This document shows, piece by piece, positions 7,900 through 34,096 of a DNA stretch of 64,000 nt. A model generated the notes under the pieces. The model was given only the letters and a program-made list of their open reading frames with translations. It did no database searches and was not told where the DNA came from. Each line of letters begins with the position of its first letter. The first letter of the stretch is position 1. The stretch spans positions 124,001 to 188,000 of IMG/VR virus record IMGVR_UViG_3300048672_001051; one strand, given 5' to 3'. The position numbers were made by a program, and so were the translations under genes.

Positions 7900-8269
7900 A
7901 ACAATACAACAATTACATGACACTTAGCCAAGCTGATTGTTTACCTTGACGCCTTGCATGCTTTTTACGATCACGTAAGTTACACATTCTATAAGGAAAA
8001 CAGCATCCAAATTTACAAGCAGCTTGGGGGAATATCTGAACGTTTAACGCCATAAGCTTTCAAAGTCAGACAAGCCCAAAGCTTTCAGCAATGCCGTCAC
8101 CATCAAACACACCCAGACCATAGCCAGCAGTCTTTGCATGAGCAGGTGAAGCAAGTACACTATACTGCATAAAAATACCTCTTTGTTTGTGATAATTAAA
8201 TGAGTACTAAAAGTACACGTTGTATTTGTGCAATTAAGCACAAAGCAGTTGTTTATTTCAAACAACTGC

Positions 8270-14667: not shown

Positions 14668-14741
14668 TGGAGCGGTGTGGCAGATTCGAACTGCCAACTA
14701 TTGGTTGGAAGCCAAGGTGCTGACCGTTACACTACAGTCCC
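14668..14741 (-). pseudogene. tRNA-Gly(TCC) with non-pairing (chimeric) acceptor stem
   Basis: D, anticodon (CT-TCC-AA) and T arms normal; 5' GGGACTG pairs with 3' ACACCGC at only 2 of 7 positions. Confidence 0.75.
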
Positions 14742-24823: not shown

Positions 24824-24900
24824 TGGAGCTTGTGCAGAGACTTTAACTCTGTATCACTGGATTTGCAATCCAGTCCCTCGAACACTTCGGGTTAACAAGC
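24824..24900 (-). tRNA. tRNA-Cys(GCA)
   Basis: CTGGA-TT-GCA-AA-TCCAG; atypical T-loop TTAAAGT; T73; CCA. Confidence 0.85.
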
Positions 24901-25130: not shown

Positions 25131-25261
25131 GTACAAGGCCAGGACTCGAACCTGGAACCAGCTGATTGGTCGATGTAAACCTTTACTACAACACTCTATG
25201 GAGGTTAAAAGTGCAAAAGTTACTTTTTGTCGGCTGCTCTACCGATTGAGCTACCCTGTAC
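25131..25261 (-). ncRNA. tRNA-shaped RNA with about 60-nt insert in place of the anticodon loop; candidate Y (Yrl) RNA
   Basis: Acceptor (G)TACAGGG/CCTTGTA(C), canonical D and T arms, no CCA, followed by U run; starts 11 nt after TROVE stop. Confidence 0.75.
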
Positions 25262-25272
25262 TATTTTAAAAC

Positions 25273-26736
25273 TTAAACTGAAAGTGTATTAATTAACACT
25301 TCAGCATCACCAGACATGCTAAGGTATTGTAAGATGTTGTCGCTATAGCCTGCAAACTGAGTCCAACCATTAGATGGCTGTGCAGCAGATGTAGGTGAGC
25401 GGCCCATATTAAAAGCAAATTTATGCTCAATACTTCTAAAAAAGCTGTCAAAAGAATTGCCAGTGGCTAAAGACTGCAGCTGCATGTCTGAAAACATGAA
25501 CACAGTGTCTAATTCAACATTTGGAATGTTGTCAACAATACTTGCTAAATTAGTTCCACCGCCGACATCAAAGTGTTTAATCTTATTAATGATATCTTGA
25601 TAAGAATCACTAACAGACACTTCAATATTTTTAGAGAATGTGCCAAAGGTTGTAATGTAAACTGGTATGTTGTAATTATGTAATGATTTACAAATCACAG
25701 CAGCCAGAAAAGCACTATTATTCATTGGAATGCCCTGCATTGACAAGCTTGCGTCAACAACTAACCAACAAGCTCGTTTAGAAACTTGTGGAACATTGTC
25801 AATAGCGTAGCCCAAAGCTTGCACTAACTCGCTTTTGTACGATTGCGTTTGGTCGATAGCTGAATAAAACTGATATGGATACAGTTTTGCTCTAGCTACT
25901 GAACGACGATCGACAAGTTTTGAGCGAATTAAACTTTGAATTTCAGTTAAGCTTTCTGAAGCAACAAGCATACTAATAGACATGCGTTCGATATTAGCTA
26001 AGTTTTTAAGCAAAGCTTGATAACCGAGTTTATTGTTGCGTAGAAGGCTTAACCAACTGTCAATTCGAGCTTGAGGTGTTGAATTTTGCGAACTATCACT
26101 AAGCAAAACTTCGTGAGTGTCAGGTTTTTCTAAAGTATTATTTAAAATACATTTAAAAATACGTGACTGCTCAGAATCCTTAGGTTGAGGCCTTGCTGTT
26201 AAAATAAGAAACTTCAAATTGACATTGTTAATCTTTCGGTTATATTTGCCAAATTGATAAGCATCAAACTTATTTAAACCAACTTCCAAAGATTTTTTTA
26301 CAATTTTAGGAAGTTCTTTAGGCAGCAAACCGCCTGCAAGTAAATTACCAACTAGTTTCAACATGTCATCGACACGATAAAAATACTCGCCAATCAACTT
26401 ATAAGAGTTTGGAGGAAACTCAGTACAAGTTAAAAGATAGCTAGTTAGTAAATCTAAAGGTGCTTGTTTTAACCCAAGTATATGCCGTGCAAAAATAGCC
26501 AGATTAAAAACAAATTTACTTTCACCTGCAGCGTGTAAGTCTGCAAGTAGTTTAATAACAACAGTCTGAAGTTCAGTCTGTGTGTGGTAAAAAGTATCAC
26601 CTTTAATTAAACTGTTCAACACAATGTTTAAAAGTTGTTGTTTAGAGCTTAAAGTTAGTTGAGGATTCCCCTCAAGAGAAATTGACATTTTTGTCATTTG
26701 AACATCGCCTTTTAAAAGGGAAATGCTGACTTTCAA
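25273..26736 (-). CDS. Ro60/TROVE domain protein with C-terminal vWA
   Basis: FGKYNRK, THEVLLS, YQALLKNLANI, LYPYQFYSA, VVDASLSM, GGTN, FSDMQ. Confidence 0.85.
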   Translation of the reverse strand: MKVSISLLKGDVQMTKMSISLEGNPQLTLSSKQQLLNIVLNSLIKGDTFYHTQTELQTVVIKLLADLHAAGESKFVFNLAIFARHILGLKQAPLDLLTSYLLTCTEFPPNSYKLIGEYFYRVDDMLKLVGNLLAGGLLPKELPKIVKKSLEVGLNKFDAYQFGKYNRKINNVNLKFLILTARPQPKDSEQSRIFKCILNNTLEKPDTHEVLLSDSSQNSTPQARIDSWLSLLRNNKLGYQALLKNLANIERMSISMLVASESLTEIQSLIRSKLVDRRSVARAKLYPYQFYSAIDQTQSYKSELVQALGYAIDNVPQVSKRACWLVVDASLSMQGIPMNNSAFLAAVICKSLHNYNIPVYITTFGTFSKNIEVSVSDSYQDIINKIKHFDVGGGTNLASIVDNIPNVELDTVFMFSDMQLQSLATGNSFDSFFRSIEHKFAFNMGRSPTSAAQPSNGWTQFAGYSDNILQYLSMSGDAEVLINTLSV

Positions 26737-29179: not shown

Positions 29180-29836
29180 TTAAGTAAAGTCTACTTCAGG
29201 CATAATTTTTTGATAAATCATTGTATTCATGTCTAACTCATATTCCAGCTCTGGTGGGAAATGAATGTGTGCATCTGGGCTGATATAAATCCGCAAAGTA
29301 TGATCTGGAGAGATGCCTTCAATGAGACCAATAAATTGGACTTCGTGTGCCATTTCTGGGAAAAATGGGAAAATCCAAGGAGTATCTTGATTATACGTAA
29401 GAAGCAAATATTCATAAGCTTCCATATGTAAATCAAAATCATCAATCATTTTCAGACGAATTTTATGAGGATACTCAGCAGTTGGTACCGTTTGACGGAC
29501 AACAGACCCATCGCTAGGTGTTGGAGTAGGTTCAACATAAGCACTCATTTGAGCAATACGTTCCAACAGTGCAGCGTCTGTCGCTGACACACCAGTAGTA
29601 GCTTGGATAGTTTCTTGTGGTGTACTGAAAGTTGCAGTAGGCTCAGATGTGGGAGCTAATGTCGCTGCAGCTTCTGTAGGTGCAGCAGCTACAACTGGCT
29701 GAATATTCAGCTGACTAGCAAGACTTTGCGTAGTTGTCACTGTAGCATCAGCAACCACAAGCTGCGGTGTATTTGCATTACGAGCATCTAAAGCGGTTTG
29801 TAGATTATTAGTCACTGTCATAGAGATTATACTCAA
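29180..29836 (-). CDS. Hypothetical protein with Ala/Thr/Pro-rich linker
   Basis: 218 aa; low-complexity N half, globular acidic C half. Confidence 0.7.
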   Translation of the reverse strand: MSIISMTVTNNLQTALDARNANTPQLVVADATVTTTQSLASQLNIQPVVAAAPTEAAATLAPTSEPTATFSTPQETIQATTGVSATDAALLERIAQMSAYVEPTPTPSDGSVVRQTVPTAEYPHKIRLKMIDDFDLHMEAYEYLLLTYNQDTPWIFPFFPEMAHEVQFIGLIEGISPDHTLRIYISPDAHIHFPPELEYELDMNTMIYQKIMPEVDFT

Positions 29837-29869
29837 TTGATATTTATGTTGATAATTTTAAAAATAAAA

Positions 29870-30178
29870 GACCTAGCTTTGATCCTAAGGCTAGGGCTTA
29901 GCCTACACACCAGCTACGAGTAAACACCAAGGACAGACCCCTTGTAAAAACATATACGTAGATTTTAAAAAGCTTTAAGCATTACGCTTTAAACTTTGCC
30001 TATCATAAACTTTTAGCTTTTAGCTTTAAGCTTTAAGCTTTAAGAGTCGAAAAGCACCGTCTTGCCAGAAGCAAGACAGTCCACTTTTTTATCTTATGAT
30101 AGCGGTAATAAATAATGGCTATTACCAAGCCCGTCTGTAACGGTATTTGCAGTGTGCAAGTAAAGATCAGTTCAAATA
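29870..30178 (-). ncRNA. Candidate structured RNA with tandem T(T/A)AAAG(C/T) heptamers
   Basis: Five tandem 7-mers at 30008-30044 plus two more nearby; multiple hairpins; 9-bp long-range stem. Confidence 0.55.
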
Positions 30179-30799
30179 CTAAAGTTCGAGTTCGACTTTA
30201 ATATTAATATTTGCTTCTGAAAGTACAGTGTCAAGTTCTGATTTCAAGAACTCAATCTGTACAGCCATTGCTTCCATATGCTCAGCTGGGGTACTTGAAG
30301 AGCCTTTATAAGCTAAGATAACTGGACAATGTAACTTGTCCAAACTATCTTTAAACGAGGCCACCATATCTGCAGGTGTAGTCGGATCCATTTTAGCTAA
30401 AGTTTGTGCTTCATAAGCTTCAGCAATTTTTTGAGTATCAAGAAATTGCCGACGATACGTAGCTAAAATAGTCTCAAGCTCTGCCACATAATTTTTACGA
30501 ATAATGGCTTCAGCAATAGACATTTCTACACCATTCACAACAACAGTGTTTTCAACGTTTGCTTTAGCAATAGCACTTTTAATGCGAATAATTTGATCTG
30601 CTTTTGCAGTCAGGCTTTGGCCTGACGACATAATAGCATTATTCAAACTTTTATCATCTGGATACGTCTTCAAACTTGGGCGACGTGTTTGAGTTCCAAT
30701 TACAAGACTGACAAGTACAGAACGATCTAATAGTTTTTTAAAACTATCAGGATGCTGTTTAACCATACTGAGAAGACGATGAAGGGTGTACTGGGCCAT
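30179..30799 (-). CDS. Coiled-coil protein, DIP1984-like from memory (start at MAQYTLHRLL)
   Basis: TLHRLL, MSIAEAIIRK, IEFLKSELDTVLSEAN pattern. Confidence 0.65.
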   Translation of the reverse strand: MAQYTLHRLLSMVKQHPDSFKKLLDRSVLVSLVIGTQTRRPSLKTYPDDKSLNNAIMSSGQSLTAKADQIIRIKSAIAKANVENTVVVNGVEMSIAEAIIRKNYVAELETILATYRRQFLDTQKIAEAYEAQTLAKMDPTTPADMVASFKDSLDKLHCPVILAYKGSSSTPAEHMEAMAVQIEFLKSELDTVLSEANINIKVELEL

Positions 30800-30982: not shown

Positions 30983-31272
30983 TTAAGACCAAAGACGCTG
31001 GCGAATTGCTTCCAATGAAGTTTCAGCAACAAACTGACCATCTTTATAGACAGTTTGAAGACATCCAACAGCTTCTTCTTCAAGTGTCACACTGTCTTTT
31101 AAGACGTATGCGCCACTCTCGCCAACAACTTGCAAAAGACCTTTTGCAGATTTTTTTGAAGAATCTGTTTTAGGATCTTTATAAATTGCTTGTGATTGGC
31201 CATTAACAATAGCGTTAGTGGCTTTCACTGCAGTGCCCAAATGATCACGAGAAAGCATATTCAAAGAGAATG
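30983..31272 (-). CDS. nadV: NAMPT-like protein, exon 2
   Basis: Splicing gives GVG-S-FSLNMLSRDHLGTAVKAT...KDPKTD...KKSAKG, matching the NAMPT C-terminus. Confidence 0.88.
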
Positions 31273-32289
31273 CATTTTTAAATAGTCGCCTAAAGGCGAT
31301 ACTACAGGAATATTAAAAAGTTCTGTCGACCAGTTCGTAAACACGCGAAAACTTTTATGCGTGTCTAAAATTAGTTGTTCAATCTGATAGGCAGTGTATA
31401 AATTTGTTTGTAAGCTGTCTAATAAGCTAACAGAGAGTTTAGACTTACTTTCAATAGCTTTTAAACGCTTATCTAAATTAGTCGTAATACCTATTTTATA
31501 ATAGGGTCCAACTTTTAAATAATAGACAAAAGCATTTACAAATTTTTTATCAGGATTTCTCAAAAAGAAACAATCTGAATAATTGCCGAGTAATTTTTTA
31601 TTTGCAACTAAATCGTCTATAGCACATCTAAAACAATGCTGACCTTGCAAATGTTTTGCAAAAGATTTTTTAAACAATCCGTGAATTGGGCATACAATAT
31701 CAATTACACTACGCATATTAACATATAAATCCAAATTTGTTTTAGGATAAATATATTTAAAATTGTAGTGATTATTGCAACGATTGATAACAGAATAATA
31801 GTCAGAAGTTCTTGTAACTTTAGATAAGTTAATGACACATCTCGGACAAAATTCTGTATATAATCTTTTATAAGCAAAATTTGTTAATTGATAAAAATAT
31901 GCACAATTTTTACAAATAAAATTTACTTTCAACTCTTTAAGAGTTGTTACAGTCGGTTGATCAACAACTTCATAAATAAAAGCATTAGTTTCGAAATTTT
32001 CCTTTAAAAGTGTTAAACGTTCTAAAAACTTATTAGCCATAGCTTTTGACAAATTAACATGCCTTTTTAAAGCTACGGCTGCAGCTGTAGATTGTTTATA
32101 CTCTTTTAAACATAAATGACAAGAATGTTTAGCTTGTAAATGCTTATCAGCTGTTTGCTGAAAAACATAGTTATGTTTTAAACATTTTATATCTGATTTA
32201 TCTTTCCAACTTTTAGCTTGGAAATTTGAATAATCGTATAAGCCATTGTAACGATTTTTTGCTTTGTTTATAAAAAACTCAATATTCAT
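31261..32289 (-). CDS. Intron-encoded endonuclease: Zn-finger repeats plus C-terminal GIY-YIG-like (T5orf172-type) domain
   Basis: C-x2-H...H-x4-C-x2-C repeats; VYYLKVGPYYKIGITTNLDKRL; GGAGGT SD. Confidence 0.8.
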   Translation of the reverse strand: MNIEFFINKAKNRYNGLYDYSNFQAKSWKDKSDIKCLKHNYVFQQTADKHLQAKHSCHLCLKEYKQSTAAAVALKRHVNLSKAMANKFLERLTLLKENFETNAFIYEVVDQPTVTTLKELKVNFICKNCAYFYQLTNFAYKRLYTEFCPRCVINLSKVTRTSDYYSVINRCNNHYNFKYIYPKTNLDLYVNMRSVIDIVCPIHGLFKKSFAKHLQGQHCFRCAIDDLVANKKLLGNYSDCFFLRNPDKKFVNAFVYYLKVGPYYKIGITTNLDKRLKAIESKSKLSVSLLDSLQTNLYTAYQIEQLILDTHKSFRVFTNWSTELFNIPVVSPLGDYLKMHSL

Positions 32290-32640
32290 CTAGTATTACA
32301 CCTCCATTTTTTGTGTTAATTATTATAACACAAAAATTAAAAATGTAAATTTAAAAATGGACTATATCTTCACTCCTAAATAAGGAGGCTTCCTGTTTCG
32401 GGTGATAAAACCCTACTCTACTCGCTTCTTCGGGTAGTTAACCCTATGCTTTCGATAGTCTCTGAACTCTCATCTGTATTTATTATACAGATGCTCAGCT
32501 GCGGATTAATTCATCAATAAACTTTTTACTATACCTAGGTCATTACGCTAGCCCTTATCTATATCACTATGATAAGTTAGTATTTATTGATTAAGAACAG
32601 TCCCCGCAATTAAGGAAGTTTTACTTGGGCCATTTTGTTA
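31273..32640 (-). mobile_element. Group I intron, 1368 nt
   Basis: P AATTGCGGGGA 32601-32611, Q AATCCGCAGC 32498-32507, R GTTCAGAGACTAT 32455-32467, S AAGATATAGTCC 32359-32370; P1 TTGGGT/GCCCAA with U.G at splice site; terminal G. Confidence 0.93.
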
Positions 32641-34096
32641 ACCCAACGCCAAATACAATATTGGTGCTAGCAAAGCCTTTCGCTTCAAGCCGTTTGAAAA
32701 TTTCAGTAGCACGTTCAAATGTAATGCCATCGCCATAAATCATACCGATATGACTATCTAGTACTTTATAGCCAAGCTCGTTAACCGTGCCGCCGAATAA
32801 ATCCCAAAGAGCTTCAATTGTGCCTTTGTACTCAACATCAATTTCTTTTTCAACAAAAGACATTACTGCAGTTTTATGATTGAGCTGATAATAATTTGGA
32901 GCTGCACGAACCCACGTTAATTCATTAGCAGTCACAACCCACAGCTTATCATCCCATTTAAAAGACATTGTGTAAGTAGTCACACCTTCTTTATTAGTTG
33001 GTGTGGTAGCTTCGACTTTGTTTGCAATACGCATTTTACAAACACTTAAAAATTCATCAAAAGTCTCAGCAGACTCTTTTGAAATTTCAATGTATTGCAA
33101 ATTTGTACCTGTAATGATATCGACAGGATTGCCGGAATCACCACGAATAACAAATTTGCCATCACGCGACATAATTTTGTCTTTGTGAATTGGTAAAATG
33201 TTTTCAATAACATTCCAATAGTCATAACTGTCAGCTACATAGCTGACAATACCCGTTTTGAATTGATTCAATACGTAGTCAATATACTTGACTTCACCAT
33301 CGTACTTATCATCAGGGTTAGACATTGTAATACCTAAAGTGGTAACACTATGCTCACCAGCTGGGACTGAATAGGCAATAGGTTGTTTTGAAATATCAGC
33401 ATTATAGTACTGTTCTAAGTACATGATTGCAGGCATATTATCTGAGCCCAAAGAGCTTAGAAGAAAACCTGCACCATTTGCTGCTGAACTTTCAAAACCA
33501 CTTTGACCGCGGAATGAAAAATCATGCAATTGAAAATCTACACCATCTGTTGAACCAGTGGTTTTGATTGCTGCCGCATTAGCTAAAATACGGAACAATC
33601 GGCCAACAGTTGCAACTGTCATTGGCTTCCAAATCTGAGCACTCAAGATAGTCTCAAGATAATTTGGAAGCCACTGAAAATCTGGATGAGTATTTTTTAT
33701 AGTAAACAGTGGAATGTTTGGTTGTACTAAGGAACCTTCAGGCAAGCCTTTGATTTCAATAGGTAAATAGCCCAAATCATGCAACTGTTCAAAATGCGAG
33801 TAATCACTCATACCGATGTATGGCGTGAGTACACGTTTCATCTCAGCGATAACTTCATCTTTTGGCTGATTAAAAAATGTGTCATTCCACATATTGTGAA
33901 AAATTTCTTTGATAGCTGCTTGCAAACCAAAGAAAACAATTTGATCATCAAACAACGGATAAAGTTGTTTCAAATAATGCGTAAATCGAGCAGTAAAGTT
34001 CGAATAAATCTGCTGTGTACCTGGAGTGGTAAACTGAATATGACTCAATTTGTATGAGTCTGTTAGTAGTGCTGCAAAAGCTGGAGTTAACTTCAT
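32641..34096 (-). CDS. nadV: NAMPT-like protein (NadV or Namat), exon 1; spliced product 581 aa
   Basis: LTDSYKLSH, YLET, LHDFSFRG, PAGEHS, VADSYD, RGDSGNP, IYGDGIT. Confidence 0.92.

What the first reader, a model, noticed from the sequence alone, without database searches (positions are those of the whole stretch)
29870..30799. Coiled-coil gene with a downstream structured RNA carrying tandem heptamer repeats
Seen (minus strand, right after the stop): hairpins TTGCA/TGCAA, CCGT/ACGG, GGTAATA/TATTACC and GTCTTGC/GCAAGAC. Then TTAAAGC x3, TAAAAGC and TAAAAGT in tandem (30008-30044), with two further TTAAAGC copies. A 9-bp stem CTATCATAA/TTATGATAG encloses the repeats, and more hairpins run to about 29870. 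The roughly 300-nt gap has no ORF. Inference: a single-stranded repeat array presented by a scaffold looks like a multivalent landing site for an oligomeric RNA-binding protein (as with TRAP or CsrA sponges) or a type III-like RNA antitoxin. The adjacent protein is the obvious partner. I know of no described function for such a pair.
Basis: partly seen in the sequence, partly recalled or inferred. Interest (0 to 1): 0.72.

Follow-up and report, generated by a model that had tools for sequence, protein, structure and literature searches.

The report
Phage RNA with phased heptamers, protein-linked
The gap after this phage gene encodes a conserved, pseudoknotted RNA of about 260 nt carrying about ten evenly spaced 7-nt repeats; it always follows the same protein gene of unknown function in hundreds of phages, including the model phage T5, and seems undescribed.

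Summary
Window 29902-30160 (minus strand) is a member of a large structured-RNA family that no Rfam 15 model detects.

**Structure.** Three helices covary across 44 distinct loci: a closing stem P1, a 5-bp helix P2 and a pseudoknot PK. Together they close a large loop. The loop holds a variable insert and about 10-11 phased heptamers of consensus U-Y-A-N4, in which only U1 and A3 are strongly constrained.

**Linkage.** The RNA always lies directly 3' of one protein family of about 205 aa. This is a helical bundle whose nearest structure is 3KDQ (DIP1984 / DUF6847-like, function unknown).
- 49 of 49 phage records that carry the gene have one strong RNA hit just downstream.
- 30 of 30 RNA hits found independently, with enough upstream DNA, have the gene upstream.

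**Distribution and expression.** The gene is in 735 cultured-phage records, including T5 (gene T5.085), where the RNA sits in an unannotated gap. In two RNA libraries of T5-infected cells, contigs run through gene plus RNA and stop at the RNA's 3' end.

**What it is not.** It is not a Ro60 Y RNA (TROVE in 1 of 48 records), not a type III antitoxin and not a VIPR RNA.

**Best reading (inferred).** It is a co-transcribed RNA whose phased repeats form a multivalent protein-binding lattice, most likely for the linked protein. Binding and function are untested.

The parts
30179..30796 (-). Protein gene, 205 aa plus stop. Helical bundle with a small beta sheet; remote DIP1984/DUF6847-like; phrog_1491.
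   Evidence: ORF and alignment to homologs fix the start at ATG 30796. phrog_1491 E 3.5e-23. AF2 pLDDT 92.6. 3KDQ is the best structure match, Z 10.5.
30152..30160 (-). P1 5' strand (CTTGCACAC), the closing stem of the RNA. It starts 18 nt after the stop codon.
   Evidence: It pairs with 29910-29902. Anchored P1 pairs are 98% paired in 44 distinct loci against 50% with shuffled partners.
30143..30148 (-). PK 5' strand (AAATAC), inside the family motif 'stem + CGAAAAC' (here TGCAAATAC).
   Evidence: It pairs with 29927-29922. The offsets are fixed in about 30 of 44 RNAs. The score is 5.62 against 4.36 (sd 0.13) with shuffled partners. There is a compensatory change against L003 (AAATGC/GCGTTT).
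30051..30142 (-). Variable region with local hairpins: CCGT/ACGG, GGTAATA/TATTACC, GTCTTGC/GCAAGAC. It also holds the 5' strand CTATCATAA (30102-30094) of a lineage-specific 9-bp pairing.
   Evidence: This region differs in length and content among loci. Some relatives carry a YrlA-type tRNA-like domain here.
30002..30050 (-). Heptamer block 1: seven phased units. The first (TCGACTC) and last (TTATGAT) are degenerate. h1-h5 (30043-30009) are TTAAAGC x3, TAAAAGC, TAAAAGT.
   Evidence: TRF. In register with the family array in alignment A7. Logo U .86, Y .83, A .81. The substitution profile constrains positions 1 and 3.
29972..29999 (-). Heptamer block 2: four phased units (GCAAAGT, TTAAAGC, GTAATGC, TTAAAGC).
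   Evidence: Nearly invariant A at 7-nt spacing in A7 (A90, A97, A104, A111 of the window row).
29962..29971 (-). Junction motif TTTTTAAAAT (family consensus UCGAUAAAAU), directly 5' of P2.
   Evidence: Nearly invariant columns in A7. Used as a search pattern.
29957..29961 (-). P2 5' strand (CTACG).
   Evidence: It pairs with 29918-29914. 41-44 of 44 are paired at four of the five positions (40 at the fifth), with all Watson-Crick types.
29928..29944 (-). P3 hairpin (CAAGG-GGTCTGT-CCTTG) inside the 3' core.
   Evidence: Read from the sequence and listed by the hairpin scan. An equivalent hairpin is seen by eye in relatives but was not scored.
29922..29927 (-). PK 3' strand (GTGTTT).
29911..29918 (-). 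P2 3' strand (CGTAG, 29918-29914) followed by CUG (29913-29911). G, C and U are invariant or nearly so and the last G is nearly invariant; the family motif is GGCUG or AGCUG.
29902..29910 (-). P1 3' strand (GTGTGTAGG), the end of the RNA core.
29858..29901 (-). Terminator-like hairpin (CCTAG...CTAGG) with a T run, identical in L003. A sigma-70-like promoter for the next gene follows (29855-29826).
   Evidence: Sequence and alignment. Promoter scan. Clear intrinsic terminators follow the RNA in several relatives.

Best explanation
SHOWN. The gap encodes a structured non-coding RNA of about 260 nt (core 29902-30160, minus strand).
- A closing stem (P1), a pseudoknot (PK) and a 5-bp helix (P2) form a compact core.
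- The core closes a loop of 170-300 nt. The loop holds a variable insert and two blocks of phased heptamers, 7 + 4 units of U-Y-A-N4, which are C-poor.
- The RNA is genetically inseparable from the gene just upstream, a DIP1984/DUF6847-like helical protein of about 205 aa. It lies on the same strand and starts 10-60 nt after the stop codon.

SUGGESTED. Gene and RNA appear to be made as one transcript that ends at the RNA's 3' side. Terminators follow the RNA, and T5 RNA-library contigs stop there.

INFERRED. The phased UYA triplets are a multivalent lattice for a repeating protein unit with a 7-nt step.
- The co-encoded protein is the most likely ligand, giving a defined phage ribonucleoprotein of roughly ten protomers on a pseudoknot-anchored RNA.
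- What that particle does is unknown. Its place among tRNA genes and early or nucleic-acid-metabolism genes, and the tRNA-like insert in some members, point to host RNA or translation metabolism or to conflict with host or rival elements.
For: Periodicity: period 7 is the best periodicity in 68 of 87 homologous loci.

Helices:
- P1 is 98% paired against 50% with shuffled partners. G-U pairs are common and A-C pairs almost absent, so the pairing is at RNA level on this strand.
- P2 is kept through all pair types.
- PK shows covariation, z about 9.7, with a compensatory change between the two closest relatives.
- The spacing between the P2 strands is 46-56 nt in most RNAs.

Linkage:
- Model R1 finds one strong hit in 49 of 49 gene-bearing phage records, always just 3' of the gene.
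- In the reverse test, 30 of 30 CM-positive loci with enough upstream DNA have the gene upstream, against 0 of 48 CM-negative pattern matches.
- The same holds in T5-like DT57C, Bacillus phages G and Deep Blue, Vibrio JSF10, Pseudomonas PHB09 and Erwinia Rebecca.

Heptamers: the constraint sits at U1 and A3 (29 and 54 mismatches, against 277-502 at the other positions).

Expression: T5 RNA-library contigs span gene plus RNA and stop at L228 7961 and 7979, beside the P1 end at 7973.

Precedents for proteins reading phased short repeats: VIPR (10.64898/2026.04.26.720920). From my own knowledge: HutP (UAG every 7 nt), TRAP, and CsrA/RsmE sponges.
Against: - No direct evidence of binding. The complex job was not folded.
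- The protein family is mildly acidic (median pI 6.1) and matches no known RNA-binding fold.
- Folding energies alone do not show the array as unpaired: pairing probability 0.59 against 0.64 for the rest.
- The RNA evidence comes from unstranded assembled contigs, which may include DNA.
- The window's own phage has no RNA data; only a freshwater metagenome DNA run holds it.
- Many loci are related, so the counts are not all independent.
Confidence: 0.5

Rival explanations
1. Sponge or decoy for a host factor. The A/U-rich phased array titrates a host single-strand RNA binder or nuclease, such as ribosomal protein S1, RNase E, PNPase, cold-shock proteins or an SSB-type protein. The linked protein would be a chaperone, stabiliser or effector rather than the repeat reader.
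For: - The array is long, C-poor and A/U-rich.
- The protein is acidic and has no RNA-binding fold.
- Some members carry a YrlA-type tRNA mimic, a module that recruits host tRNA enzymes in Y RNAs (PMC4201824).
- The module sits among tRNA genes.
Against: - The module occurs in phages of Bacillus, Lactococcus, Vibrio, Pseudomonas and enterobacteria, so the host ligand would have to be universal.
- Strict co-inheritance with one phage protein is explained more simply by direct partnership.
- The exact 7-nt phasing with only U1 and A3 fixed implies a specific repeating reader.
Confidence: 0.2
2. A cis-acting 3' UTR element. The structure mainly stabilises or terminates the upstream mRNA, or lets the protein autoregulate its own message. 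The T4 gene 32 operator does this with a pseudoknot plus UUAAA repeats bound cooperatively by gp32, whose site size is about 7 nt (own knowledge).
For: - The RNA always lies within 10-60 nt of the stop codon on the same strand.
- Terminators follow it.
- T5 contigs join gene and RNA.
- The pseudoknot-plus-repeats layout resembles the gene 32 operator.
Against: - It lies 3' of the ORF, not at the ribosome-binding site.
- 260-400 nt with three covarying long-range helices, and sometimes a tRNA-like domain, is far more than a terminator or stabiliser needs.
- Its sequence and size are conserved across very distant phages.
Confidence: 0.12
3. A VIPR-like noncontiguous guide. Protein units sit on the conserved UYA, and the variable positions of successive heptamers together read a nucleic-acid target.
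For: - The layout matches vrRNAs: a tandem short-repeat tract, alternating conserved and variable positions, a structured pseudoknotted 3' part, phage-encoded, next to its protein (10.64898/2026.04.26.720920).
- Positions 5-7 vary freely among relatives.
Against: - The protein is not a RAMP.
- Units are 7 nt, not 5.
- The variable positions are compositionally biased and more uniform within an array than across arrays: 4.24 against 4.67 distinct dinucleotides, and GC x4 in the window.
- There is one RNA per genome, not arrays of different guides.
- Between the window and L003, changes fall on positions 2 and 4 as often as on 6 and 7.
Confidence: 0.07
4. A Ro60-dependent Y RNA (YrlA-like) serving the TROVE protein encoded about 3.2 kb downstream on the same strand.
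For: - The window has a TROVE gene within 4 kb on the same strand, which is the Y RNA search criterion of PMC4201824.
- The RNA has a closing stem followed by CGAA, resembling the GNCGAA motif.
- Relatives carry a YrlA-type tRNA-like domain (29.5 bits, E 2e-4).
Against: - TROVE is present in only 1 of 48 records that carry the module.
- No hit reaches the YrlA gathering score.
- The window RNA has no tRNA-like domain.
- A separate tRNA-shaped element lies right after the TROVE gene and is the better Ro60 partner.
Confidence: 0.03
5. A type III toxin-antitoxin-like pair, with a repeat RNA neutralising a toxic protein.
For: A repeat RNA lies next to a protein gene in a phage.
Against: From my own knowledge, known type III antitoxins are units of about 34-36 nt placed upstream of an endoribonuclease toxin of the Kid/MazF-like fold, separated by a terminator. 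Here the units are 7 nt, the RNA is downstream, and the protein is a helical bundle.
Confidence: 0.03
6. A DNA-level element: iterons, a replication origin or a protein-binding array acting on double-stranded DNA.
For: Tandem short repeats lie in an intergenic region near replication genes in some loci.
Against: - The helices covary with frequent G-U pairs and almost no A-C pairs, so selection acts on the transcribed strand.
- A 7-bp period does not match the DNA helical repeat.
- The strand and position relative to the gene are fixed.
Confidence: 0.02

Closest known systems
VIPR systems (Vipr RAMP protein + vrRNA), bioRxiv 10.64898/2026.04.26.720920
   Same: Both are phage-encoded. Both put a protein gene beside a non-coding RNA made of 9-16 tandem short units with conserved and variable positions. 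Both RNAs end in a conserved structured part that includes a pseudoknot. In VIPR the protein and RNA form an RNP.
   Different: - VIPR units are pentamers (YNNGG); here they are heptamers (UYA-N4).
- The VIPR protein is an RRM/RAMP fold; here it is a helical DIP1984/DUF6847-like bundle.
- VIPR loci often hold several different vrRNAs; here there is one RNA per genome.
- Here a 5'/3' closing stem and a large variable insert are present.
- There is no evidence that the variable positions encode a target.
Bacterial and phage Y RNAs of the YrlA type with Ro60 (PMC4201824; Rfam RF02553)
   Same: Both have a closing stem formed by the 5' and 3' ends, followed by a CGAA-containing motif. A subset of the family carries the same permuted tRNA-like domain (T arm, capped acceptor stem, D arm). 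Both are encoded beside a partner protein on the same strand.
   Different: - The partner is not Ro60 (TROVE in 1 of 48 records).
- Y RNAs are 80-130 nt and have no heptamer array and no pseudoknotted 3' core.
- The Rfam score is below threshold.
- The window RNA lacks the tRNA-like domain.
HutP, TRAP and CsrA/RsmE target RNAs (own knowledge)
   Same: All present short triplet motifs at regular spacing that are read by the subunits of an oligomeric protein. HutP reads UAG with 4-nt spacers, the same 7-nt period as here. TRAP reads 11 GAG/UAG triplets. RsmZ-type sponges present several GGA motifs on a scaffold.
   Different: Those are 5' leader attenuators or trans-acting sponges for host regulators of known folds. 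Here the triplet is UYA, the array is closed by a pseudoknotted core, the RNA lies 3' of its linked gene, and the protein family is unrelated.
T4 gene 32 translational operator (own knowledge)
   Same: Both combine a pseudoknot with an unstructured A/U-rich tract holding repeated UUAAA-like elements. In T4 a protein with a site size of about 7 nt coats the tract cooperatively.
   Different: The T4 operator lies at the 5' end over the ribosome-binding site of gene 32 and is short. Here the element is 3' of the ORF, is 260-400 nt long with exact phasing, and is linked to a different protein.
Type III toxin-antitoxin systems such as ToxIN (own knowledge)
   Same: Both put a tandem-repeat RNA beside a protein gene on a mobile element.
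   Different: Unit length is about 36 nt against 7 nt. The antitoxin RNA lies upstream of the toxin. The toxin is an endoribonuclease of a different fold.
DIP1984 / 'septicolysin' / DUF6847 proteins (PDB 3KDQ)
   Same: It is the nearest relative of the protein by profile (E 0.009), by Foldseek (probability 1.0) and by VIA-align (Z 10.5, 151 of 152 residues aligned).
   Different: The relationship is remote: 11-12% identity and below the Pfam threshold. The phage proteins are about 50 residues longer. 3KDQ has no known function, so the match explains nothing mechanistically.

Membership tests
Rfam families (all 4227, release 15) | Score at or above the family's gathering threshold. | tested here: not met
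   No family other than tRNA was found in the window or in 20 related loci. Only chance-level hits appeared at E up to 10 in the gap.
Y RNA / YrlA (RF02553) | Encoded near a Ro60 (TROVE) gene on the same strand. | tested here: not met
   TROVE was found in 1 of 48 phage records that carry the module. The window does have TROVE about 3.2 kb away.
Y RNA / YrlA (RF02553) | tRNA-like domain (T arm, capped acceptor stem, D arm). | tested here: not met
   No tRNA-like element lies in window 29822-30178. It is present only in a subset of relatives: L090 scores 29.5 bits against a gathering score of 69, and motifs for both arms occur in about 5 of 44.
Y RNA / YrlA (RF02553) | 5' motif GNCGAA(N0-1)G (PMC4201824). 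| tested here: inconclusive
   The family consensus is 'P1 stem + CGAAAAC', so only CGAA is shared. The window has TGCAAATAC.
VIPR (10.64898/2026.04.26.720920) | Vipr protein with a RAMP/RRM fold. | tested here: not met
   The AF2 model is a helical bundle. The best match is 3KDQ and there is no RAMP among the hits.
VIPR (10.64898/2026.04.26.720920) | vrRNA of YNNGG-type pentanucleotide repeats. | tested here: not met
   The period is 7 and the logo is U Y A A A N N.
VIPR (10.64898/2026.04.26.720920) | Repeat tract followed by a conserved structured 3' tail (pseudoknot in one clade). | tested here: met
   A conserved 3' core with P2, P3 and a pseudoknot lies after the array. This is a resemblance, not membership.
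Type III toxin-antitoxin | Antitoxin repeats of about 34-36 nt upstream of an endoribonuclease toxin gene (own knowledge). | tested here: not met
   The units are 7 nt, the RNA lies downstream of the gene, and the protein is a helical bundle.
DIP1984 / DUF6847 (PF20935) protein family | Significant profile match or shared fold. | tested here: inconclusive
   Pfam E is 0.081 for 2 of 4 members, below the cut-off. The 3KDQ profile gives E 0.009. Foldseek gives probability 1.0 with TM 0.48/0.62. VIA gives Z 10.5. Atlas structure neighbours include DUF6847. Together these point to a remote relative.
tRNA / tmRNA | Detected by ARAGORN or the Rfam tRNA model. | tested here: not met
   Nothing was detected in 29822-30178.
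This RNA family (model R1, built here) | Phased heptamer blocks + AAAUC-P2 ... GCUG + P1, directly 3' of the family gene. | tested here: met
   The window scores 108.3 bits as a training member. Non-training members also score: DT57C 58.9, Deep Blue 82.7, JSF10 81.1, phage G 71.4, PHB09 49.1, Rebecca 27.6, ME3 36.5 bits.

The most novel reading that the evidence does not exclude
The pair is a second, RAMP-independent class of phage tandem-repeat RNP. About ten copies of the DUF6847-like protein polymerise on the UYA-N4 lattice, anchored by the pseudoknotted core. The four variable positions of each unit are displayed to read a nucleic-acid or protein target, giving a programmable or multivalent effector used in phage-host or phage-phage conflict. 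It is present in T5 and hundreds of other phages.
Probability: 0.1. Interest if true: 0.95.

Novelty: categorically new. Interest (0 to 1): 0.83.

Why it matters
If the reading holds, a large and widespread phage RNA-protein module has gone unannotated.
- The protein profile search found 2231 clusters at 50% identity.
- 393 IMG/VR stretches and 735 cultured-phage records carry the gene.
- The hosts span Bacillus, Lactococcus, Vibrio, Pseudomonas, Erwinia, Klebsiella, Salmonella and E. coli, and the phages include the classical model T5.

The RNA's design is unusual. A pseudoknot-locked core closes a loop of exactly phased 7-nt units in which only two bases per unit are fixed. Apart from the recently reported VIPR RNAs and a few attenuator or sponge RNAs, I know of no described counterpart.

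The question is directly testable, because the module is in T5, with its E. coli host, genetics, and existing RNA libraries of infected cells.

It would also give a first functional lead for the DIP1984/DUF6847 ('septicolysin') superfamily. And it would correct the 'tail fiber protein' label now spread through many phage annotations, for which nothing in this analysis gives support.

Tried and rejected
**Promoter or regulatory motif.** ATCNACGTA, conserved after the array in the first relatives, is not repeated elsewhere in the genome in comparable contexts. It turned out to be the P2 strand.

**T4-type MotA box (GCTTTA on the plus strand).** Considered from memory and dropped, because the covariation is on the minus-strand RNA.

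**Ro60 Y RNA.** Rejected by TROVE absence.

**Degenerate tRNA or tmRNA.** Nothing was detected.

**Consensus folding.** RNAalifold on plain MAFFT alignments recovered only P2. P1 and PK had to be scored with junction-anchored scripts. Model R1 therefore covers only the 3' 190 positions and holds only 5 base pairs.

**Alignments for locus search.** The 150-sequence alignment was too divergent for the search for related loci. Sub-alignments worked.

**Pattern scan.** TCGATAAAATCC...GGCTG gave many chance hits inside coding DNA. These were sorted out with R1.

**Complex prediction.** The protein-plus-RNA job was accepted but not folded, so it is no evidence either way.

**Pairing probabilities.** They do not separate the array from the rest of the RNA.

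**Neighbouring genes.** No partner is conserved in more than a quarter of loci. The 845-aa ORF in the window is a Dda-like helicase, not the phrog_8308 neighbour.

**Literature.**
- Searches for septicolysin/DIP1984/DUF6847, heptamer-repeat RNAs and T5.085/T5p083 found no description.
- AcrIIIA1-RNA (PMC11662646) is unrelated.
- The RNA may be one of the unnamed candidates in the catalogue of 10,006 viral candidate RNAs (PMC10690425). This could not be checked.
Full report
**Context.** The window is bases 124001-188000 of a 229,656-bp IMG/VR phage record judged 98% complete. It is a large Acinetobacter-type phage. The only DNA relatives in the phage collection are Acinetobacter phages. The window carries 15 tRNA genes. 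Around the finding, all on the minus strand, lie:
- an NAMPT gene in two pieces;
- the gene of interest;
- a 357-nt gap;
- a 213-aa ORF of unknown function;
- a PP-loop ATPase, a NADAR protein, a DPBB protein, a TerD protein and a TROVE/Ro60 protein.

**Observation.**
- The five tandem heptamers lie at 30043-30009, with two further TTAAAGC copies at 29992-29986 and 29978-29972.
- TRF reports the array (period 7, 5.6 copies).
- The 14-mer TTAAAGCTTAAAGC is unique in the genome.
- The gap has no ORF of 40 aa or more.

**The protein.** The gene is 30796-30179, 205 aa. Homolog alignments support the ATG at 30796.
- It matches only phrog_1491, labelled 'tail fiber protein', and no Pfam family.
- A profile search of 1.84 billion representatives found 2231 clusters at E <= 0.001, nearly all of 200-215 aa.
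- N80 and N196 are invariant. Conserved motifs sit at the N terminus, around residues 73-101 and at the C terminus.
- With a deep alignment, AlphaFold2 gives a confident model (pLDDT 92.6). It shows long helices plus a small sheet built from the two termini and a central hairpin.
- The only meaningful structural relative is PDB 3KDQ, an uncharacterised Corynebacterium protein of the DIP1984/'septicolysin'/DUF6847 kind: profile E 0.009, Foldseek probability 1.0, VIA Z 10.5.
- No function is known for that family.
- The family is slightly acidic (median pI 6.1).
- I found nothing that supports the 'tail fiber' label. In T5-like phages the gene sits in the tRNA/early region.

**The RNA is a family.** The closest relative (L003, protein 82% identical) keeps the gap at 90% identity, and the 3' third is almost invariant. 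Distant homologs also have heptamer arrays downstream: ME3 at 25% identity, and L004 and L007 at 32%. Across 87 homologous loci, period 7 is the best periodicity downstream of the gene in 68.

Reading 13 loci side by side showed a common plan. I then scored it.
- **P1, the closing stem.** The 5' strand is followed at once by [C/U]GAAA. It pairs with a 3' strand that is preceded at once by GCUG. A stem of 9-15 bp was found at these anchors in about 49 of 87 loci. In 44 distinct sequences, 98% of anchored pairs form, against 50% when partners are shuffled. G-U pairs are frequent and A-C pairs almost absent. P1 was the selection criterion, so this figure is biased upward. The anchors and the shuffled control limit that bias.
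- **P2.** This 5-bp helix lies right after AAAUC and right before CUG. It was not used for selection, and it pairs in 41-44 of 44 sequences at four of its five positions (40 at the fifth). The variable positions show all four Watson-Crick types. The two P2 strands are 46-56 nt apart in 42 of 44.
- **PK, the pseudoknot.** Six bases starting three positions after P1 (the AAAYNN of CGAAAAC...) pair with a hexamer 3-4 nt upstream of the P2 3' strand. The offsets are fixed in about 30 of 44. The mean best score is 5.62, against 4.36 (sd 0.13) with shuffled partners. Pairs include AAACCT/AGGTTT, AAATCG/CGATTT, ACACTC/GAGTGT and CAACTA/TAGTTG. Between the window and L003 there is a compensatory change, AAATAC/GTGTTT against AAATGC/GCGTTT.

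P1, PK and P2 thus form a compact core. It closes a loop that contains a variable insert and the repeats.

**The repeats.** They align in register across the family.
- Block 1 has about seven units. A short linker follows, which is often a small hairpin. Block 2 has about four units. Then comes UCGAUAAAAUC and P2.
- The logo is U .86, Y .83, A .81, A .63, A .53, N, N.
- Among 148 related pairs, mismatches per position are 29, 399, 54, 277, 406, 502 and 454. Only U1 and A3 are tightly held.
- The variable positions are poor in C.

**Linkage.** A covariance model of the 3' 190 positions (R1) found one strong hit in each of 49 phage records that carry the gene. In every record checked, the hit lies just 3' of the gene on its strand. 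That set includes about 20 records not used for training and the distant ME3.

For the reverse test I scanned IMG/VR for TCGATAAAATCC-N44-58-GGCTG.
- Of 80 loci returned, 32 were R1-positive.
- All 30 positives with enough upstream DNA encode the family protein 208-484 nt upstream.
- None of the 48 R1-negative chance matches does.

No other neighbouring gene is conserved in more than a quarter of loci. tRNA genes are frequent neighbours.

**Cultured phages and expression.** tblastn finds the gene in 735 cultured-phage records.
- In T5-like DT57C it is the homolog of T5.085 (T5p083). A 442-nt unannotated gap follows it and scores 58.9 bits with R1.
- Bacillus phages G and Deep Blue, Vibrio JSF10, Pseudomonas PHB09 and Erwinia Rebecca all score in unannotated gaps of 380-560 nt.
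- T5 itself is locus L228, with the RNA at about 8320-7973 on the minus strand.
- RNA libraries of T5-infected cells hold the region.
- In two runs, contigs run from beyond the gene through the RNA and stop at 7961 (X6) and 7979 (X10), beside the P1 end at 7973.
- In X6 the next contig ends at 7911, about 10 nt past a TATAAT that precedes T5.084.
- In two other runs a single contig spans everything.
- Contigs carry no strand and may include DNA. This therefore suggests, but does not prove, a gene-plus-RNA transcript that ends at the RNA.
- For the window's own phage, only a freshwater metagenome DNA run exists.

**Window anatomy (minus strand).**

| Feature | Coordinates |
|---|---|
| Stop codon | 30181-30179 |
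| P1 5' strand | 30160-30152 |
| PK 5' strand | 30148-30143 |
| Variable region, three local hairpins | 30142-30051 |
| Heptamer block 1 | 30050-30002 |
| Heptamer block 2 | 29999-29972 |
| Junction motif | 29971-29962 |
| P2 5' strand | 29961-29957 |
| P3 hairpin | 29944-29928 |
| PK 3' strand | 29927-29922 |
| P2 3' strand | 29918-29914 |
| CUG | 29913-29911 |
| P1 3' strand | 29910-29902 |
| Terminator-like hairpin and T run | to about 29858 |
| Promoter-like site | 29855-29826 |

The 9-bp CTATCATAA/TTATGATAG pairing is specific to this lineage.

**Comparison with known systems.** Rfam 15 has no matching family.
- **Y RNAs.** They share the closing stem followed by CGAA, and a subset of our RNAs carries a YrlA-type tRNA mimic (PMC4201824). 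But TROVE is present in only 1 of 48 records. The window has a better Ro60 partner candidate right after its TROVE gene.
- **VIPR (10.64898/2026.04.26.720920).** This is the closest precedent in logic: a phage protein, a tandem short-repeat RNA and a pseudoknotted tail. It uses a RAMP protein and pentamers, and its variable dinucleotides are hypervariable guides. Here the variable positions are biased and rather uniform within an array.
- **From my own knowledge.** HutP reads UAG every 7 nt. TRAP and CsrA read phased triplets. The T4 gene 32 operator joins a pseudoknot to UUAAA repeats coated by a protein with a 7-nt site size. Type III antitoxins differ in unit length, gene order and toxin fold.

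**Mechanism.**
- *Shown:* a conserved pseudoknotted RNA with phased UYA-N4 units, and strict linkage to one protein family.
- *Suggested:* co-transcription, with the 3' end at the RNA.
- *Inferred:* the repeats are a lattice for a repeating protein unit, most simply the linked protein. I put this at about 0.5.
- *Rivals:* a sponge for a host factor (0.2), a cis-acting 3' UTR or autoregulatory element (0.12), a VIPR-like guide (0.07), a Ro60 Y RNA (0.03), a type III-like pair (0.03), and a DNA-level element (0.02).
- *Against the preferred reading:* the protein is acidic and has no known RNA-binding fold. Folding energies do not mark the array as unpaired. The complex prediction was not run by the tool.

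**Novelty.** I found no description of this RNA or of the pair.
- It may be hidden among unnamed candidates in a catalogue of viral structured RNAs (PMC10690425).
- It may also be among the 'stable RNAs' of early T5 literature, which the paper library does not hold.
- DT57C annotates a different stable RNA nearby.

On present evidence this is an undescribed RNA family and an undescribed kind of phage RNA-protein module.

Noticed in passing
window 30983-34096 (minus strand): The NAMPT gene is split into a 491-aa ORF (32621-34096) and a 93-aa ORF (30983-31264). The short ORF matches the C-terminal part of NAMPT profiles. Between them lie a 342-aa T5orf172/MUG113 endonuclease-type ORF (31261-32289) and a 330-nt gap. 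Relative L003 has the same split with only 290 nt between the pieces and no endonuclease. This looks like an intron with or without a homing endonuclease, but Rfam gave no group I hit.
   Followed up: partly
window 25148-25262 (minus strand): Directly after the TROVE/Ro60 gene (25273-26736) lies a tRNA-shaped element. It has an acceptor stem, a D arm and a T arm, but about 75 nt sit where the anticodon arm should be. It is a candidate Ro60 partner (Y-RNA-like) of this phage.
   Followed up: no
window 24827-24900 and 14679-14734 (minus strand): The Rfam tRNA model hits these sites (41.1 and 33.1 bits), but ARAGORN does not call them. They may be divergent or partial tRNA-like elements.
   Followed up: no
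L228 7973-8320 (phage T5) and L212 3007-3353 (DT57C): The model phage T5 carries the module: gene T5.085 plus an unannotated RNA before T5.084. RNA-library contigs from infected cells end at the RNA's 3' side.
   Followed up: yes
L212 4931-5486 (DT57C): The record annotates another 'rnaX, stable RNA with unknown functions', about 1.9 kb downstream of the module in T5-like phages.
   Followed up: no
L090 1955-2024, L010, L005 4716-4787 (ME3 'tRNA-OTHER'): In a subset of family members the variable region holds a permuted, YrlA-type tRNA-like domain (T arm, capped acceptor hairpin, D arm). In ME3 it is annotated as a tRNA of undetermined type.
   Followed up: partly
L026 67-2328 and 20 other loci: A protein of 750-850 aa of unknown function (phrog_8308) is the commonest upstream neighbour, in 21 of 86 loci. 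It has a weak match to an RNA-dependent RNA polymerase phrog. The window has no such gene next to the module.
   Followed up: partly
window 29183-29821 (minus strand): The 213-aa ORF just downstream of the RNA has no Pfam or PHROG match. It is conserved in L003 but is not a conserved neighbour in the family.
   Followed up: partly
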